64,000 nucleotides of DNA, taken from the IMG/VR virus record IMGVR_UViG_3300004463_000226, positions 1 through 64,000 of that record. One strand, written 5' to 3'. The notes beneath the pieces are model-generated. The model ran no database searches. It saw only the letters and a program-made list of their open reading frames with translations, and was not told where the DNA came from. This document shows, one piece after another, positions 36,608 through 59,773 of the stretch (positions are counted from its first letter, which is position 1; each line of letters opens with the position of its first letter). A program made the position numbers and the translations under genes.

Positions 36608-36706
36608 GAGGGAGCATGGTCCTTCGTCCACAGGCATCCGACAATGTTTTTTCTACGGTTGATAAGTGTATAGTGTAGGAGCTATACACTTATCTTATAG
36701 TTTTTT
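36608..36706 (+). ncRNA. Candidate ~100-nt small RNA, antisense to the flanking operon
   Basis: AACA-TTATAT-TG at 36597, 5' hairpin GAGGGA/TCCTTC, and a 13-bp terminator (36661-36694) with a T-run. Confidence 0.5.
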
Positions 36707-52559: not shown

Positions 52560-53102
52560 TCACTCCTTTAATAGTTTTATACATTGGTCTAACGATGCTC
52601 TTATTTCCTTCCTTATATTCTCTTGCTGTCTCGTACAAGCTCTTTTAATGGCTTTATAATCAATAACAGTTCTTTCATATAGACCAAAGAAATACTTGTA
52701 TTGTTTTATTACATCTTTTGATTGAAATCGTATTCTTATTATATTGGTTTTATCATTAGAGAAATCTATTATTTTGAAATCCACATAAAATATGTTCTCC
52801 CAGTCAGCATGAATACTGTCCCACTTAACTATACACGGATTTCTGTGTCTAATATTACCTGTAGCATAATTCTTATCTACCATTATAGCTAGTGAAGGTT
52901 CAAAATAATTTGTATCACCTTCAGTTATATCAACTGCTTGACTTGTATAAAATCTCCTGTTACTTTTTATTTCCAGAAATATCATTAGATTCACAAATGA
53001 AAATAAATCACTTACAATTGTATCCCTCATATTAAAACTATTGAATAGGTATCTTGTTTTTTCTATGTCCATAGGTTTTTTTAAAAAAGATGGTAGCTTC
53101 AC
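52560..53102 (-). CDS. Hypothetical protein
   Basis: GGAGG RBS, GTG start. Confidence 0.6.
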   Translation of the reverse strand: MKLPSFLKKPMDIEKTRYLFNSFNMRDTIVSDLFSFVNLMIFLEIKSNRRFYTSQAVDITEGDTNYFEPSLAIMVDKNYATGNIRHRNPCIVKWDSIHADWENIFYVDFKIIDFSNDKTNIIRIRFQSKDVIKQYKYFFGLYERTVIDYKAIKRACTRQQENIRKEIRASLDQCIKLLKE

Positions 53103-53209
53103 TTATTTCCCTCCAATGCAATGTATTCTTATAATAAAGTTAAGAGGATTATAAATACTTACTAAAAGACTTTAAATATAGACATAGGATTATTTTCCTA
53201 TGTCCGCCA

Positions 53210-53335
53210 GATAATATTATCTATTTTTCATTAAATAAATATATAATAACATTAATAAGTAAATAATACTATTAAATGTTATTATATATACTAATATTAT
53301 CTATTTATATAATCTCTATATATCTCATAAAAAAT
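53210..53335. other. Extremely AT-rich tract with a 15-bp inverted repeat (candidate DNA-unwinding element)
   Basis: ATATATAATAACATT (53239-53253) / AATGTTATTATATAT (53275-53289); ATTATCTATTT direct repeats at about 53216 and 53296. Confidence 0.5.
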
Positions 53336-53515
53336 CTCCAACATATATCTTTATATCCTTGCCCCCCCTATCCCCCCCATAACACCGTAAAAGGGTGCTA
53401 TGAGGAGAACAAGGTGTGTGTCTGGGATAAATAAAGATACGACGAATGAAAGTCCATCTTTTCATCAATGCGATATTTTTGTTGGGAGACAAATATATCT
53501 AAGTTTGACTAGATT
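53320..53515 (-). ncRNA. Candidate ~200-nt structured RNA with a 21-bp G-U-rich helix and a G7-AUA-G7 tract
   Basis: AACA-TTAAAG-TA at 53515-53526 (-). CCUUGUUCUCCUCAUAGCACC pairs fully with GGUGUUAUGGGGGGGAUAGGG only on the - strand (6 G-U pairs). Outer stems UAUCUUUAU/AUAAAGAUA and UCUCC(C)AACA/UGUUGGAGA. Confidence 0.7.
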
Positions 53516-53565
53516 ACTTTAATGTTCCCCATTAGTAAAAAATAATTGAACATTTTTTTGCTTAC

Positions 53566-53780
53566 AAAAACCCCTAATAGATCCAGCGAGGTCTATTAGG
53601 GAATTTTTGCATATGGGAAATGTGATAGAGCATGAGTACCAGTTTTTTATCTCCCAAGCAGTTAGATAAGAATTTGGTTCATGGTCATGGTTCTGAAACG
53701 TCCGCGTTTCAACAGTCTGTTTGATTTTAATATATGCCTTCTATACAGGGGCCTGGTAATACTTGGAAATATATCCAATT
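53566..53780 (-). ncRNA. Candidate ~215-nt multi-branched RNA with its own promoter and terminator
   Basis: AACA-TAATAG-TA at 53780-53791. Closing stem UACCAG/CUGGUA around three hairpins (including UGAAACG-CGGA-CGUUUCA and UUAUCU/AGAUAA). Terminator CCCUAAUAGA/UCUAUUAGGG plus a U-run; no ORF with an RBS. Confidence 0.65.
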
Positions 53781-53926
53781 ACTATTATGTTACTATAGTA
53801 ATTAAATAAAATTAAAAAAATAGACCTTGCCAATAAGCAAGGTCGAAATAATATAAAACATAGGAAGAAATAAATTTAAAATGGAGTTAAATCTATTACT
53901 TATCTTGTTTAATAATTAGTAACTTA

Positions 53927-54211
53927 TTATTTAGATTTCTTTATACAACCGTAATTATTACTAAACCCATTACCGTGCCAAGTTTCACTTACAACTCCCC
54001 ATTTACCACCCATTAATTTACACTTCTCTTTCTTTAATTCAATAATTTTGTTTTCATGTATAGCTAAAGGAATAAATGGTGCAAAGAAAGTAAATATTAA
54101 TACAATCATACCTATTGCACGAATATGTATATTTCTACCCATTAGAGCAATATACACTCCAATACCTGCGCTAATAAGTCCAAATATAAACCAAATTAAA
54201 AATGTTTTCAT
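53927..54211 (-). CDS. Small membrane protein
   Basis: Two TM helices and a C..MGG...Y.C tail. Confidence 0.6.
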   Translation of the reverse strand: MKTFLIWFIFGLISAGIGVYIALMGRNIHIRAIGMIVLIFTFFAPFIPLAIHENKIIELKKEKCKLMGGKWGVVSETWHGNGFSNNYGCIKKSK

Positions 54212-54256
54212 ATTATCATATCCTTTCTTAATACAAAAAATAAAAACCTTGTCGAA

Positions 54257-54703
54257 TTAACGACAAGGCGAAAAGATTTTGCGCTGAATCATTTTCATGA
54301 ATGCCAATATATCATCTTCTTTTACTTCAGTTTTAACTGTAATTTGTTTTCTGCTATTCATGAACTCTTCTCTACGTTTCATACGATCATTATGGCGTTT
54401 CTTGATGAAGTCAGGTGCATGTCTTTCCACCTTGGGATCTGTTATCGTTTGAATATTTAATACTCTTGGTTTTCTTCTAGTAAAAGCAGGCATTGTGTCT
54501 ATTTCTTTCATATTATATATCGGCTCTTCAATAACCTTTGTGATCACAATAGGTTCTTCAACTACTTCTACAGTTGTTACACCCATTACAAAATCAGCTT
54601 CAGCTTTAAGAGCCTCAGATTCACCTTGGAAGAATTTCTTTATGCTATCAGTATCAATCTTTGTTGTTGAAACTACTACATTTTTATTTTCGATAATTTT
54701 CAT
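54257..54703 (-). CDS. Hypothetical protein
   Basis: GGGAG RBS with a leader box at 54726. Confidence 0.6.
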   Translation of the reverse strand: MKIIENKNVVVSTTKIDTDSIKKFFQGESEALKAEADFVMGVTTVEVVEEPIVITKVIEEPIYNMKEIDTMPAFTRRKPRVLNIQTITDPKVERHAPDFIKKRHNDRMKRREEFMNSRKQITVKTEVKEDDILAFMKMIQRKIFSPCR

Positions 54704-55365: not shown

Positions 55366-55551
55366 AATGGGGTTATCCCCCAGGAGGCTTTAGATGACGT
55401 TCGGCAAAGACCACGCTCTACTGTATCAAAACCTTATTTTTACCCAATAGATTTAGTGGTACGGCTTCTAGATTGAGGGACCTTTTATATAAATGATTCT
55501 ATTCATCAGTATTCTTTATTCAGAAGAATGTTGATGAATAGAATTGTTTTT
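55366..55551 (+). ncRNA. Candidate fold-back RNA containing an 18-codon ORF with a sequestered RBS
   Basis: AACA-TAAAAT-TA at 55355. Nested pairs GGU..UCCC/GGGACC, GGAGGC/GCUUCU, ACCAC/GUGGU and UCUA/UAGA. AGGAGG precedes an ORF at 55394-55450. Long terminator hairpin at 55494-55548. Confidence 0.55.
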
Positions 55552-55624: not shown

Positions 55625-58600
55625 TTGCTATCTGTTTCGGAGATACCACACTTAAGGGTATATAAGCAAAGAACTATACTTCCTTTTGATAAAAAGGTTC
55701 AAAGTATGTATGGAATGGTATTTATCAATAACAATTCAATTGAGTCTGCTATTGAGTTAATGAATAGTCAGGCTATTTCTTCAGCTGGTAAATATCATAT
55801 CTATTATCTAGATAACCTTTATTCAGGAAGATTATTCGGTAAATCATACCGAGAAGTATTAAATAAAGAACGTGAAGAAATTTACGCTGAAGTTGAATCA
55901 AAGGCAAAGTTTATTAAGACAGAGAAATCTCTTATCTCAGTTAATAGCCGTAACATGTATTTTGATCTTCAGCACCACAATGATATTTTCTTTAGATTAG
56001 GAAATAGAACGTCTTCCTATATTAAGAAAGTGAATGATTATGCTTCTTTCCTTAAAGATATTATTAATGACGAAAGATTCTCTAAGTATAAAGAGAAGAT
56101 TGTCGCCATTAATGTCGATACATGGGTATCACAAGTTAGGAAGGAAATGACTAAAGGTTCTAAATTAGATAATCCTATTATGATTATCTATTATGCTCTT
56201 ATCAAATCTCTAGAGGAGTTTAAATCAATTGGTAATATTGATATTATTCTATACTCTGGAAGTTCAATGGTAAGAGTGAATCCTTCATTATGTGACAAGA
56301 AGTCGTACTATTTATATCGCCAAGAGGTTTCTAAACTTCATACTTCTATTACATTAGAAGATGAAGCCACCATTGAAAAGCAAGTTGAGCTCGATGCTGT
56401 TTATCAAAAAGTAGCCAAGAATTTCTCAGAGCACTTTAACTTCACTGGCGATGATGAAGAAGAAGGAGATGAGGAAATTGAGGAGAAAGCTAAAGAACGT
56501 CTTGAAGAGATTGTTGAAGAGGAGCCTGAAGAAGGTGTTACTGGTAGGGAACTAGAGAAGGAACTTACAAACAAGCTAATCAATGACGAGAAACTTCTCA
56601 AAGATGTTTACTCATATACTCAAGAGAAAAAGACTGGAAATTCAGCTGTTTCTTCAAAGCGCGACCAGGAACTAAGAGATAAACAAAAACAAATTAAAAT
56701 TGAAAATATGACTATTGAGGATATTAGAAATATTAACTCTAAGACAGTTAAACTGGACAAAGTTGATGTTTCTACTAAGGTTAAAACGACTAATAAGAAT
56801 GTTACGACAATTCATTATCCTCATTTTGAAAAGTCATATAATGAGCATTTATTGAAGAAGGATATGATTGATGTATTAATGCATCTTAATGACAGTTCAA
56901 TTCCTGTATTTGTCCGCAATATTGATGTTGTTGATAGTTCAGACGAATTGAACCATAAGGAAACTTATACTGTCGACTTAGAAGATGCTAATCGTGTTCG
57001 CCACCGTTTAAAATTCGATATGCCTAAATTTACTGACGATAAGTTCATGTACCTAAATGGTAATAAGAAACTCATTGTCAAGCAGCTTTATATGAAACCT
57101 ATTGTCAAAAATGGTCCAGATGAAGTTCAGGTTGTAGGTAGCTACAATAAGATCTTTATTCGCCGTCATGGAGGAAAGGTTTCTGCTAAAATAGAAAGAT
57201 TTAAAAAGGCTGTCTTAAAAGAAATAAAAGGTGTTGTTGTTAAATATGGCAATAATATTTCTACAAATAATGATTTTAAGACTACTATTGAGTACGATGA
57301 AATTTCTAAAGACATTACTTATATTCGTATAGGAGTTACGGAGTTTTACTTTAACCAAGAAGAAGTTCAGAAGTTGGTCAAAGACCGTAAGATAAAAATA
57401 AGTGATGATGAAATGTGTATTGGATTTATTAATAAAAAAGATCCAATCACTGTTAAATACGATACTCAACGCGTTGGTCCAGATATGGATATTGTTGACT
57501 TCATATTGTCAGTCGGTAAAGGTGAACTAGTTACTAGTTTCGATGCTGCAACAACAGGTAAGAAGTTTATCTATAGCCGCGCAACGGTTATGTCTAAACA
57601 AATCCCATTAGTTTTACTATTAGGGTACTTTGAAGGATTGAGTTCTGTTTTACGTAAAGCAGGCATTAAACATTACTTCACAGATACACGTCCTAAATTA
57701 GATGTTAATCAAGGTTCTATACAATTTGCAAATGGACATCTAGTATTTGATAGATATCCTTTTGAAAACTCATTACTAATGAATGCTTTTGCTGATATTC
57801 CAACCAGAGCATTCAACTATGAGGATTTTGATGAAAGAGAAGTTTACCTATCTATTTTTGACGTTATGTTTAAACAACGTAACTTAGGTAACGCTCTCTT
57901 GAACTACTATGAATTTATGATTGATCCTATTATGAAAGAAGTATTAGAGGATCTGAACTATCCAACAGGATTCGTAGAAGTTATGTTATATGCAAACGCA
58001 TTATTAACAGATAACTCATTTATTCGTGAGACTGATATGAGTAACTATCGTGTTCGTTCTAATGAGTTAATTAATGCATATCTATATAAAGCAATTGCTG
58101 ATGCTTATGGTTCTTATCGTGCAACAGCTAATAACAATAACCCAGTTAAAATCTCTATTCCACAAGATGCGATTACTAAGAAACTATTAATGTCTCAAAC
58201 TGTTGAAGACTATAGTATTCTTAACCCTATTGTTGAATTGGAGAAATCTCGGGCTATTACTCCTAAAGGACATTCTGGTATGAACTTGGATGATGCCTAT
58301 ACACAGGATAAACGTGCATTCGATCCATCTATGATGGGTATTATGGCAATGTCAACATCTCCTGATGCTAACTGTGGTATCGTTCGTGAGTTAACTCTAG
58401 AACCTAATATATTAAGTCCACGGGGTTATATTGACATCAAGAATGACAAACTTAAAGAATTAACTGATGCTAACTTGTTCTCTGCGGCAGAATTATTATC
58501 TCCTCTCGGAGTTTCAAGGGACGATAGTATCCGTACAGCAATGGCAACTAAACAATCAAAACACATTATCCCTATCGAGAAATCTTCTCCAGTTCTAATC

Positions 58601-59773
58601 TCAAATGGAGCTGAACAGATTATACATTATCATTTATCTAATGACTTTACAGTTGTTGCAAAGTATGATGGTAAAGTAGTGGAAGTCAATGAAGATGCAG
58701 GGGTAATGATTGTAGAATACAGCGATCCTAAAGGTATCCCACAGCCAGGTGGTGGAAAGAAAACAATACTCCATCAAGCTGTCGATATTAGTCCTAGAGT
58801 AGTGAAAAACGGTGCGGGTGGATTCTTCTTAACAAACCAACTTACAAGTAACTATAAAGTTGGTCAGAAGTTTAAGAAGAGTGATATTATTGCATCTGAT
58901 AAGAAATTCTTCACTAACTCAGATATTCATGGAAACCGATTCAATATCGGATCATTGCAGAAAGTAGCATGTATGAGTACGTTTGCAACTTATGAGGATT
59001 CTACATTTATTACTAAGAAACTGAGTGAAGAGATGGCTTCAGACATCGTAATGCAGAAAGCAATTACATTAGGTAAGAATGCCAATGTTGACTTTATTGT
59101 CAAAGTAGGTGACCATATTTCTGTAGGTGATGAATTAATCCGTTTCGAGTCTTCATTCGAAGACGATTCACTTAATAAGTTCTTAACACATATTGGAGAT
59201 GAGTTAAAAGAGGATATCAAGTCTCTAGGTAAAACTCCGATTAAATCAAAGTATACTGGAGAAGTTGTTGATATCAAAATATACTCTACAGTAGATCTAG
59301 ATGAGCTATCTCCAACATTGAGAAAGCTTGTTAGTGCATATTATGCTCAAATTAATAAAAAGAAAAAGACTATCGAGAAATACGATAAGTCTAATGAAGT
59401 TCATAAACTAGGAGTTCTATTAAATGAGCCTACTAGTAAGATTGAAACTAAAGATGGTAAGGTTAAAGGTATGGAAGTTGGGGAAGGTGTATTAATTGAG
59501 TTCTATATCAGCCATAAAGACATTATGGGTGTTGGTGATAAATTAACATTCTTCACAGCCTTAAAATCTATCATCGGGGATGTTATCCCAGAAGGTTACG
59601 AACCATATTCTCAATTCCGTCCTGAAGAAGAGATATCTTCATTCATAGCACCTGGAGCTGTATTAGCACGTATGACACCATCTATCTTGTTAACAATGTT
59701 TGGTAATAAGGTATTGGTTGAGCTTAAACGCCAATTACAGGAAATATATACAGGTAAACCATGGAAACCGTAA
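55625..59773 (+). CDS. Phage RNA polymerase beta subunit (large N-terminal/middle part), probably virion RNAP
   Basis: FMYLNG...Q, TSPDANCGIVRELT (TPEG.N.G equivalent), DD..RTAMATKQSKH, YEDS, GDKL...K and ARMT motifs. About 450-aa N-terminal extension; late-type promoter at 55584; size similar to phiKZ gp178-type subunits. Confidence 0.92.
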   Translation: MLSVSEIPHLRVYKQRTILPFDKKVQSMYGMVFINNNSIESAIELMNSQAISSAGKYHIYYLDNLYSGRLFGKSYREVLNKEREEIYAEVESKAKFIKTEKSLISVNSRNMYFDLQHHNDIFFRLGNRTSSYIKKVNDYASFLKDIINDERFSKYKEKIVAINVDTWVSQVRKEMTKGSKLDNPIMIIYYALIKSLEEFKSIGNIDIILYSGSSMVRVNPSLCDKKSYYLYRQEVSKLHTSITLEDEATIEKQVELDAVYQKVAKNFSEHFNFTGDDEEEGDEEIEEKAKERLEEIVEEEPEEGVTGRELEKELTNKLINDEKLLKDVYSYTQEKKTGNSAVSSKRDQELRDKQKQIKIENMTIEDIRNINSKTVKLDKVDVSTKVKTTNKNVTTIHYPHFEKSYNEHLLKKDMIDVLMHLNDSSIPVFVRNIDVVDSSDELNHKETYTVDLEDANRVRHRLKFDMPKFTDDKFMYLNGNKKLIVKQLYMKPIVKNGPDEVQVVGSYNKIFIRRHGGKVSAKIERFKKAVLKEIKGVVVKYGNNISTNNDFKTTIEYDEISKDITYIRIGVTEFYFNQEEVQKLVKDRKIKISDDEMCIGFINKKDPITVKYDTQRVGPDMDIVDFILSVGKGELVTSFDAATTGKKFIYSRATVMSKQIPLVLLLGYFEGLSSVLRKAGIKHYFTDTRPKLDVNQGSIQFANGHLVFDRYPFENSLLMNAFADIPTRAFNYEDFDEREVYLSIFDVMFKQRNLGNALLNYYEFMIDPIMKEVLEDLNYPTGFVEVMLYANALLTDNSFIRETDMSNYRVRSNELINAYLYKAIADAYGSYRATANNNNPVKISIPQDAITKKLLMSQTVEDYSILNPIVELEKSRAITPKGHSGMNLDDAYTQDKRAFDPSMMGIMAMSTSPDANCGIVRELTLEPNILSPRGYIDIKNDKLKELTDANLFSAAELLSPLGVSRDDSIRTAMATKQSKHIIPIEKSSPVLISNGAEQIIHYHLSNDFTVVAKYDGKVVEVNEDAGVMIVEYSDPKGIPQPGGGKKTILHQAVDISPRVVKNGAGGFFLTNQLTSNYKVGQKFKKSDIIASDKKFFTNSDIHGNRFNIGSLQKVACMSTFATYEDSTFITKKLSEEMASDIVMQKAITLGKNANVDFIVKVGDHISVGDELIRFESSFEDDSLNKFLTHIGDELKEDIKSLGKTPIKSKYTGEVVDIKIYSTVDLDELSPTLRKLVSAYYAQINKKKKTIEKYDKSNEVHKLGVLLNEPTSKIETKDGKVKGMEVGEGVLIEFYISHKDIMGVGDKLTFFTALKSIIGDVIPEGYEPYSQFRPEEEISSFIAPGAVLARMTPSILLTMFGNKVLVELKRQLQEIYTGKPWKP

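What the first reader, a model, noticed from the sequence alone, without database searches (positions are those of the whole stretch)
53566..53791. Multi-branched ~215-nt RNA arranged in tandem upstream of the G-tract RNA
Seen: a complete unit of promoter, 5' hairpin UUGGA/UCCAA, closing helix UACCAG/CUGGUA around three hairpins, a single-stranded ACCAUG-ACCAUG-AACCA repeat, and a strong terminator. It has no RBS-supported ORF and is insulated upstream by another terminator (53823-53844). Inference: a dedicated ncRNA gene, possibly working with the adjacent RNA; the short repeats suggest protein-binding sites.
Basis: partly seen in the sequence, partly recalled or inferred. Interest (0 to 1): 0.7.

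Follow-up and report, generated by a model that had tools for sequence, protein, structure and literature searches.

The report
Orphan late small-RNA unit in jumbo phage
The stretch looks like a self-contained, non-coding, late-expressed transcription unit of an uncultivated AR9/PBS1-like giant phage, but it is one lineage-specific cassette in a variable array of such units, and its proposed branched fold and partnership with the neighbouring G-tract RNA are not supported.

Summary
The window is the first 64 kb of a 234-kb jumbo phage from rhizosphere and soil metagenomes. It is a distant relative of Bacillus phages PBS1/AR9 and Listeria phage LPJP1.

**What holds up**
- On the minus strand, 53791-53566 carries a near-consensus AR9-type late promoter (AACA-N6-TA, start at A 53780).
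- It encodes a 215-nt transcript with no Shine-Dalgarno-led ORF.
- It ends in a strong two-way terminator (53601-53572).
- The promoter motif is clearly used genome-wide, and this copy ranks 27th of about 470,000 positions.

**What does not hold up**
- Without the terminator, the body folds no better than shuffled sequence (z = -1.2).
- Part of the ACCAUG repeat is paired in the best fold.
- No Rfam family matches, and no homolog exists in any collection or in eight related phages.
- No target stands out, and pairing with the G-tract RNA is no better than chance.

**Context**
Relatives carry, at the same locus, arrays of 1 to 12 promoter-plus-terminator mini-units. Each array ends in a conserved G-tract element. 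The upstream unit and the G-tract unit are conserved, but the middle unit is not. A soil strain that is 5-8% diverged in flanking genes has no change in the 85 nt of this unit it covers.

**Verdict:** probably a real late non-coding RNA of unknown role.

The parts
53823..53844 (-). Intrinsic terminator upstream of the unit. It is the terminator of a separate, conserved small RNA ('RNA0', about 53897 to 53815, with CU-rich UUUCUUCCU at 53870-53862).
   Evidence: Terminator scan. RNA0 aligns with units in L008, L009 and L010.
53780..53791 (-). AR9-type late promoter AACATAATAGTA. The predicted start is A at 53780.
   Evidence: Consensus AACA-(6N)-TA/G, with the last base as start site, from PMC5312081. 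The motif is enriched 10-50 nt upstream of gene starts (59, against 6-12 in other bins and 11-16 for permuted cores). This site ranks 27th genome-wide by a weight matrix trained only on gene-proximal sites.
53566..53780 (-). Predicted 215-nt non-coding transcript ('RNA1'), the finding itself.
   Evidence: Bounded by the promoter and terminator. No RBS-led ORF. No Rfam match. Fold.
53763..53778 (-). 5' hairpin UUGGA-UAUAUU-UCCAA.
   Evidence: Pairing probability about 1.
53694..53711 (-). Hairpin UGAAACG-CGGA-CGUUUCA.
   Evidence: Stable in both the best and the centroid folds.
53675..53691 (-). ACCAUG-ACCAUG-AACCA short repeat.
   Evidence: Read directly from the sequence. The first copy is unpaired and the later copies pair with UGGUACUCAUG in the best fold. 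The 19-mer matches elsewhere only by chance.
53644..53672 (-). Hairpin UUAUCU ... AGAUAA with flanking pairs.
   Evidence: Best and centroid folds.
53753..53758 (-).
   Evidence: Complementary to 53642-53637, but pairing probability is 0.012.
53637..53642 (-). In the best fold it pairs with the ACCA repeat instead.
53566..53601 (.). Strong two-way intrinsic terminator: 12-bp stem at 53601-53572, with a U5 run to 53566 on the minus strand.
   Evidence: Identical in the diverged soil strain in run X11.
53515..53526 (-). Next late promoter, AACATTAAAGTA, which drives the adjacent G-tract RNA (53515 to about 53330; G7AUAG7 at 53378-53362).
   Evidence: (rank 117). It is orthologous to the promoter region in L010.

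Best explanation
RNA1 is an independent, late-expressed, non-coding transcription unit of an AR9/PBS1-like jumbo phage.

**Proposed mechanism**
1. The phage's own non-virion multisubunit RNA polymerase starts at A 53780 from a near-consensus AACA-N6-TA promoter.
2. It makes a transcript of about 215 nt.
3. It stops at a strong intrinsic terminator.
4. The upstream RNA0 terminator and RNA1's own two-way terminator isolate the unit from the flanking early operons and from the G-tract RNA.

**Place in the locus**
The unit is one lineage-specific cargo in a locus that, across this phage clade, holds a variable array of promoter-plus-terminator mini-units. These lie between a conserved CU-rich small RNA and a conserved G-tract element.

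**Shown and inferred**
- Shown: the sequence signals, genome-wide use of the promoter motif, absence of coding signals, the array context, and local sequence constancy between strains.
- Inferred: that the transcript accumulates and acts in trans as a small RNA, on a host-specific RNA or protein partner rather than on a phage mRNA.
For: - The phage clade is set by RNA polymerase beta similarity to PBS1, LPJP1 and S6.
- The AR9 late consensus is AACA-(6N)-TA/G with the last base as the start site (PMC5312081).
- In this genome, 59 of 399 motif copies have a same-strand gene start 10-50 nt downstream. Other equal-width bins give 6-12, and permuted cores give 11-16.
- The RNA1 promoter ranks 27th of about 470,000 positions by a matrix it did not help train.
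- The terminator has a 12-bp stem plus a U run.
- No RBS-led ORF, no coding remnant by tblastx, and no tRNA.
- 53103-53926 is the longest non-coding gap of the genome.
- The same locus in L008-L013, L015 and LPJP1 holds small promoter/terminator units.
- Soil strain X11 shows 25 differences in 502 nt and 8 in 101 nt in flanking genes. Over 53436-53650 it shows only one substitution and one insertion. Both lie in the spacer, and none lies in the 85 nt of RNA1 covered (Fisher p = 0.003).
Against: - No RNA data: no RNA run could be listed.
- No homolog in any relative or collection, so there is no covariation test.
- The closest relative (78% RNA polymerase beta identity) lacks the unit.
- The body folds no better than shuffles.
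- No target in phage translation-initiation regions or by antisense matching beyond chance.
- The strain comparison covers only the 3' 40% of the unit. It could also reflect a recently exchanged segment.
Confidence: 0.55

Rival explanations
1. The transcript is a by-product. The selected parts are the composite terminator-plus-promoter modules, which insulate early operons and the G-tract element or serve as recombination sites, as PeSL cassettes do in T4-type phages. The 170-nt body between them is filler or scrap with no sequence-specific role.
For: - Unit number and content vary freely among relatives (1 to 12 units) while promoters and terminators persist.
- The L015 array repeats a composite promoter/U-tract motif 7 times and one terminator hairpin 5 times.
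- RNA1's promoter 15-mer is identical to the one driving the G-tract unit in L008 and L015.
- The body's fold is not better than chance.
- No target was found.
- PeSL precedent: PMC2839356, PMC4122927.
Against: - There is no change in the 44 non-terminator nucleotides of RNA1 covered by the diverged strain, while the adjacent spacer changed twice.
- PeSLs carry early promoters and ORF cargo, unlike here.
- A 215-nt filler is long compared with the other units (47-110 nt).
Confidence: 0.25
2. The stretch is not transcribed as a unit. The promoter match is fortuitous, and the hairpin at 53601-53572 merely ends other transcripts.
For: - About 340 of 399 AACA-N6-T[AG] copies in the genome are not gene-proximal.
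- There are no expression data.
Against: - The site scores in the top 30 genome-wide and lies in non-coding DNA.
- It sits 31 nt after a terminator, exactly as in the units of the relatives.
- Upstream transcription is already stopped at 53844-53823.
Confidence: 0.1
3. It is a small-protein mRNA. Candidates are the 38-aa basic ORF starting at UUG 53778 (near-leaderless), the 8-aa ORF at the ACCAUG repeat, or the 19-aa ORF that runs into the terminator.
For: - These ORFs exist (and direct reading).
- A neighbouring late unit at 55366 (+) does carry AGGAGG plus an 18-aa ORF.
Against: - None has a Shine-Dalgarno sequence at a working distance.
- A UUG start at +3 is a poor leaderless start.
- No protein similarity by tblastx.
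- The real genes of this phage have strong GGAGG sites.
Confidence: 0.05
4. RNA1 works with the adjacent G-tract RNA by base pairing. Its C-rich stretches (GCCCC loop, UUUCCC) would bind the G tracts, like C-rich sRNA and G-track sponge pairs in Firmicutes.
For: - The two are adjacent in tandem.
- RNA1 has CCCC and UCCC motifs.
- A 12-bp complement (UUGGGAGAUAAA / UUUGUCUCCCAA) links RNA1 to the 5' arm of RNA2's closing helix (and direct reading).
Against: - Best duplex with the G-tract core is -19.3 kcal/mol, against a shuffled mean of -20.2; 116 of 200 shuffles do as well.
- The same holds for every unit in five relatives.
- The 12-bp match is about the length expected by chance for RNAs of this size and composition.
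- Relatives keep the G-tract unit without any RNA1.
Confidence: 0.05

Closest known systems
Late transcription units of Bacillus phage AR9 (non-virion RNA polymerase promoters, AACA-(6N)-TA/G; PMC5312081, PMC5449584)
   Same: The core promoter motif is identical, with the start site at its last base. The AR9 early-promoter core TATATATTAT is also the most over-represented non-coding 10-mer in this genome.
   Different: AR9 late promoters were mapped in front of genes, and no non-coding units or arrays were reported in the passages read. The phage here is only 35-39% identical in RNA polymerase beta. Whether its DNA contains uracil is unknown.
Intergenic small RNAs of jumbo phages (201phi2-1: 11 sRNAs, three of them intergenic; phiKZ; PMC11512511, PMC8244752)
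   Same: They are short promoter-to-terminator units without a coding sequence in giant phages that use their own multisubunit polymerases, and their functions are unknown.
   Different: Those come from Pseudomonas phages, were defined from transcript data, and one is conserved across genera. This unit is predicted from sequence only, has no homolog, and sits in a tandem array.
PeSL promoter/stem-loop cassettes of T4-type phages (PMC2839356, PMC4122927)
   Same: Composite terminator-plus-promoter motifs flank variable cargo in a hyperplastic locus. Cargo differs between related genomes, and the motifs are repeated within arrays.
   Different: PeSLs use early host-type promoters and carry ORFs. 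Here the promoters are phage late type and the cargo is non-coding.
C-rich sRNA and G-track sponge pairs of Firmicutes (RsaE with RsaI, RoxS with RosA; from my own knowledge, not checked in papers here)
   Same: A G-tract RNA lies beside RNAs that carry C-rich or CU-rich stretches.
   Different: Pairing is no better than for shuffled sequences. There is no Rfam match to RsaE, RsaOG or RoxS.

Membership tests
Any Rfam 15 family (ribozymes, riboswitches, 6S, tmRNA, known Firmicute sRNAs) | Covariance-model score at or above the family's gathering threshold | tested here: not met
   No hit in the whole window at gathering thresholds. At E up to 10 over 52900-54300, nothing falls inside the RNA1 body on the minus strand except a 19.5-bit CRISPR-DR13 chance hit.
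AR9/PBS1-type late promoter | AACA, a 6-nt spacer, then T and A/G, with the last base as the start site | tested here: met
   AACATAATAGTA at 53791-53780. Consensus from PMC5312081.
AR9/PBS1-type late promoter | The motif functions as a promoter in this genome, shown by positional enrichment before genes | tested here: met
   59 copies lie 10-50 nt upstream of same-strand starts, against 6-12 in control bins and 11-16 for permuted cores. The site ranks 27th by weight matrix.
AR9/PBS1-type late promoter | Transcription actually starts at the predicted base late in infection | not testable with these tools
   No RNA run could be listed. The phage is uncultivated.
Intrinsic (factor-independent) terminator | GC-containing stem-loop followed by a U run | tested here: met
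   12-bp stem with 5 GC pairs at 53572-53601, with U5 on both strands.
Trans-acting base-pairing sRNA | An accessible region complementary to a target beyond chance | tested here: not met
   The longest antisense match in the phage genome is 13 nt, E = 0.47. The best translation-initiation-region duplex is -31.2 kcal/mol, inside the range of shuffled minima, -27.8 to -33.5. Host targets could not be tested because the host is unknown.
Structured RNA with a conserved fold | Fold more stable than shuffles, and covariation among homologs | tested here: not met
   The body gives z = -1.16. There are no homologs for a covariation test.
C-rich sRNA / G-track sponge pair | Specific pairing between the C-rich RNA and the G tracts | tested here: not met
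   116 of 200 shuffles pair as well.
PeSL-type shuffling cassette | Composite stem-loop plus promoter on both flanks, and a cargo that is present or absent among relatives | tested here: met
   The flanks are terminator 53844-53823 with promoter 53791-53780, then terminator 53601-53572 with promoter 53526-53515. The cargo is absent or different in L008-L011.
PeSL-type shuffling cassette | Early host-type promoter and protein-coding cargo | tested here: not met
   The promoter is a late phage type and no ORF has an RBS.
Small-protein mRNA | A start codon preceded by a Shine-Dalgarno sequence at 5-10 nt | tested here: not met
   Read directly from 53780-53566. GGGAGA lies 17 nt before the nearest AUG.
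Type III antitoxin (ToxI-like) repeat RNA | Tandem repeats of about 30-36 nt next to a toxin gene | tested here: not met
   No tandem repeat in 53566-53791. The only repeat is a 6-nt unit present 2.8 times.
tRNA / tmRNA | Cloverleaf detected by ARAGORN | tested here: not met
   No gene found in the window.

The most novel reading that the evidence does not exclude
RNA1 is one interchangeable cargo of a hypervariable array of strongly late-expressed small RNAs. In a whole clade of AR9/PBS1-like jumbo phages, including cultured Listeria phage LPJP1, the array is tethered to a single-copy element made of a CU-rich strand, a variable hairpin and a G5-7-N-G5-7 tract, followed by 200-530 nt of AT-rich DNA. 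The variable units would be host-specific RNA decoys or regulators, for example against defence systems, that turn over by cassette shuffling. The G-tract element would be a fixed cis-acting site, such as a transcription-primed (R-loop) replication origin or an insulator.
Probability: 0.12. Interest if true: 0.75.

Novelty: new member of a known kind. Interest (0 to 1): 0.4.

Why it matters
Small RNAs of giant phages that run their own polymerases are barely charted, and none has a known function. If this unit is expressed, it adds a sequence-defined late non-coding RNA to the AR9/PBS1 group.

The locus around it matters more. It shows a recurring design: arrays of promoter-terminator mini-units next to a single-copy G-tract element. 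That design could be studied in a cultured relative, Listeria phage LPJP1.

The analysis also shows that the AR9 early and late promoter codes extend to distant uncultivated relatives. That makes promoter-based annotation of such metagenomic phages possible.

Tried and rejected
- **Rfam:** searches at gathering and permissive thresholds found nothing.
- **Phage DNA collections:** megablast and blastn against 50,697 phage records found no match.
- **Exact-motif scans:**
  - The one viral-contig hit lies in a coding region and is a chance match.
  - All 13 metagenome-contig hits are limited to the 19-mer.
  - The one genome-contig hit is a palindromic hairpin in a GC-rich Bryobacteraceae MAG, also chance.
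- **Flanking proteins:** they have no relatives in IMG/VR. The 94-aa upstream protein has no relative in the 5.8-billion-protein set.
- **False lead:** a 16-nt match to the ACCAUG repeat, about 2 kb upstream of RNA polymerase beta in L003, L005 and L007, looked syntenic. It lies inside a gene on the other strand and was rejected.
- **Similarity to other units:** local alignment of RNA1 to all 27 units of the relatives gave a best z of 2.6, not significant. A shared GUACUCAUG with the middle unit of L009 is suggestive at most. tblastx found no coding remnants.
- **Pairing with neighbours:** whole-length duplex folding of RNA1 with RNA2 and RNA0 is not informative and no better than shuffles. 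A first co-fold script timed out.
- **G-tract alignment:** MAFFT plus RNAalifold on the G-tract elements failed to register the hairpins, so no formal covariation count was made.
- **GC skew:** it follows gene orientation and does not locate an origin.
- **RNA runs:** none was listed. The second set of DNA runs held only identical low-coverage contigs.

Full report
**Origin of the window**

The window is the first 64 kb of a 234,335-bp virus record with direct terminal repeats. It has 33.7% G+C. Near-identical sequence is held by a dozen rhizosphere metagenome runs and one soil run. The 1382-aa ORF at 55625-59773 is a phage multisubunit RNA polymerase beta subunit. Its best cultured relatives are Bacillus phages PBS1 and vB_BsuM-Goe21, Listeria phage LPJP1 and the Staphylococcus S6 group, at 35-39% identity. 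The phage is therefore an uncultivated, distant member of the AR9/PBS1-like jumbo phages, which transcribe their genomes with two polymerases of their own.

**The observation**

All features lie on the minus strand, as do all neighbouring genes.
- the 5' hairpin (53778-53763);
- the complementary hexamers UACCAG and CUGGUA;
- the ACCAUGACCAUGAACCA repeat (53691-53675);
- the strong terminator (53601-53572, with U runs on both strands);
- the upstream terminator (53844-53823).

No ORF in the unit has a Shine-Dalgarno sequence. The candidates are a 38-aa ORF starting with UUG at +3, an 8-aa ORF at the repeat, and a 19-aa ORF running into the terminator (and direct reading). The stretch 53103-53926 is the longest non-coding gap in the whole genome.

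**The promoter**

No sigma-70-like site was found at this place. The sequence AACATAATAGTA at 53791-53780 fits the AR9 late-promoter consensus AACA-(6N)-TA/G, whose last base is the start site (PMC5312081).

The motif is a real signal in this genome:
- 59 of its 399 copies have a same-strand gene start 10-50 nt downstream.
- Other equally wide bins hold 6-12 copies, and cores with permuted letters give 11-16.
- A weight matrix built only from gene-proximal copies ranks the RNA1 site 27th among about 470,000 positions. The site before the G-tract RNA (53526-53515) ranks 117th.

The AR9 early-promoter core TATATATTAT is also the most over-represented non-coding 10-mer. Both promoter codes therefore carry over to this phage.

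**The fold**

From the predicted start, the 215-nt RNA has a best fold of -51.3 kcal/mol. The 5' hairpin, the UGAAACG/CGUUUCA hairpin, the UUAUCU/AGAUAA hairpin and the terminator are all stable. In the preferred fold, CUGGUACUCAUG pairs with the second and third ACCA(UG) copies instead.

With the terminator included, the z-score is -3.5. Without it, the 174-nt body scores -1.16, and 27 of 200 shuffles fold as well. The branched architecture is possible but not supported. The significant structure is the terminator.

**Known families**

- Rfam gives nothing at gathering thresholds, and nothing credible at E up to 10.
- ARAGORN finds no tRNA or tmRNA.
- There are no tandem repeats of the ToxI kind.

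**Relatives**

DNA searches of phage records, IMG/VR and JGI metagenome contigs found no homolog of RNA1.

A search with the polymerase beta subunit found a graded series of relatives at 78% down to 55% identity. I fetched eight loci. All but one (L014, where no G-tract or array was seen) have a non-coding gap 1-2 kb upstream of the polymerase gene. The gap holds small units, each with an AACA-N6-T[AG] promoter, often in the extended form AACAUAAnAGUAAUUG, and a hairpin plus U-run terminator.

Two members recur:
- **RNA0.** A unit with UCCAUUU...AUUUCUUCCU and the terminator GACCUUGC/GCAAGGUC. It runs from 53897 to 53815 in the window and aligns with units in L008, L009 and L010.
- **The G-tract unit.** It has a CU-rich strand, a hairpin whose sequence differs in each phage, and then G5-7-N2-5-G5-7. 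It is followed by 200-530 nt of AT-rich DNA.

The G-tract motif occurs once in this genome and once in Listeria phage LPJP1, again beside the polymerase gene.

What lies between the two conserved members differs from phage to phage:

| Phage locus | Units ahead of the G-tract unit |
|---|---|
| L010 | RNA0 only; nothing between it and the G-tract unit |
| L009 | RNA0 and an unrelated 70-nt unit |
| L011 | two other units |
| L008 | RNA0 and a unit that looks like the 5' half of the G-tract RNA |
| L015 | eleven units |

No unit resembles RNA1 (best z 2.6 over 27 comparisons). tblastx finds no coding remnant. RNA1 is therefore a lineage-specific cassette. Its promoter 15-mer is identical to the one that drives the G-tract unit itself in L008 and L015. 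The L015 array repeats composite promoter and terminator motifs. Both facts fit shuffling at these signals, as described for PeSL cassettes of T4-type phages (PMC2839356, PMC4122927).

**Constraint between strains**

The soil run X11 holds a variant strain. Its contigs differ from the window at 25 of 502 positions over 53799-54300 and at 8 of 101 over 53000-53100. Over 53436-53650 they differ by only one substitution (53550) and one inserted base (after 53559). Both lie in the spacer between the RNA1 terminator and the next promoter. None of the 85 covered nucleotides of RNA1, nor the 80 of RNA2, has changed.

- Fisher p = 0.003 for the block against the flanks.
- The chance of no change in 85 nt at 5.5% divergence is 0.008.

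This suggests selection on the 3' part. It covers only 40% of the unit, and a recently exchanged segment could mimic it. The other runs hold identical sequence.

**Function**

I looked for partners and found none:
- The longest antisense match in the phage genome is 13 nt (E = 0.47).
- The best duplex with any of 281 translation-initiation regions is -31.2 kcal/mol. That is inside the range of the best values from shuffled RNA1.
- Pairing of RNA1 with the G-tract core is no better than for shuffles. The same holds for every unit of five relatives.

GGA motifs, the ACCAUG repeat and the C-rich stretches are no more frequent than composition predicts, or cannot be tested here. No RNA run could be listed, so expression is unproven.

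**Conclusion**

The best reading (0.55) is an independent late non-coding RNA made by the phage's non-virion polymerase. It is insulated by terminators on both sides and acts in trans on a host-specific partner. Only the signals, the non-coding nature, the context and the local constancy are shown.

The rivals, in order:
1. The transcript is a by-product of terminator-promoter cassettes, which are what selection keeps (0.25).
2. The unit is not transcribed at all (0.10).
3. It is a small-protein mRNA (0.05).
4. It pairs with the G-tract RNA (0.05).

Intergenic small RNAs in jumbo phages are a known kind with unknown functions (PMC11512511, PMC8244752), so this is a new member of that kind. The more interesting result is the recurring array-plus-G-tract locus.

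Noticed in passing
window 53815-53897 (-): A separate small unit ('RNA0') with the CU-rich stretch UUUCUUCCU (53870-53862) and the terminator at 53844-53823. It is conserved in sequence in relatives L008, L009 and L010, whose polymerase is only 67-78% identical. In the window its promoter has a 7-nt spacer and no terminator separates it from the upstream gene, so it may be derived from a 3' UTR.
   Followed up: partly
window 53330-53515 (-); G7AUAG7 at 53362-53378: The G-tract RNA has a conserved design in L009-L013, L015 and cultured Listeria phage LPJP1: a CU-rich strand, a hairpin of different sequence in each phage, then G5-7-N2-5-G5-7. The motif is single-copy in this genome and in LPJP1, and 200-530 nt of AT-rich DNA always follows it. 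The G runs can pair with the CU strand, or could form a G3-N1-G3-N3-G3-N1-G3 quadruplex. It could be an R-loop-primed origin or an insulator. Logan contigs of several runs break at this tract.
   Followed up: partly
window 53103-53330 (-): An AT-rich tract with tandem repeats (periods 13-20) and an AR9 early-promoter-like site, TAATATTAT-N6-G, at 53219. It lies upstream of gene 52560-53102. A 34-nt piece (53263-53296) recurs in other contigs with 3 differences, so it is a repeated element.
   Followed up: partly
whole genome (G000): TATATATTAT is the most over-represented non-coding 10-mer: 36 of its 44 copies lie in the 7.7% of the genome that is non-coding. It matches the AR9 early-promoter core. 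TATATTAT-N6-G occurs 43 times, 35 of them in non-coding DNA.
   Followed up: partly
window 55366-55551 (+): Another late-promoter unit lies just upstream of the polymerase beta promoter. It consists of AACATAAAATTA, then AGGAGG plus an 18-aa ORF (55394-55450, MTFGKDHALLYQNLIFTQ), then a long hairpin terminator.
   Followed up: no
window 36608-36706 (+): An orphan high-scoring late promoter (rank 21) is followed by a well-folded RNA of about 100 nt and a terminator. It lies on the strand opposite to all surrounding genes.
   Followed up: no
L015 3985-5265 (-): An array of 12 promoter-plus-terminator mini-units (47-157 nt) ends in the G-tract unit. Five terminators share the loop CCAGUUAGG with covarying stems, and 7 copies of a composite promoter/U-tract motif are present.
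   Followed up: partly
G000 213524-214122 and 154228 (+), outside the window: A 599-nt gap without an ORF or an obvious unit remains unexplained. A further late unit of about 90 nt starts with AAUUG and has a terminator.
   Followed up: no
window 53000-54300, run X11: A 2024 soil metagenome holds a strain that is 5-8% diverged in the flanking genes but nearly identical over 53436-53650.
   Followed up: yes
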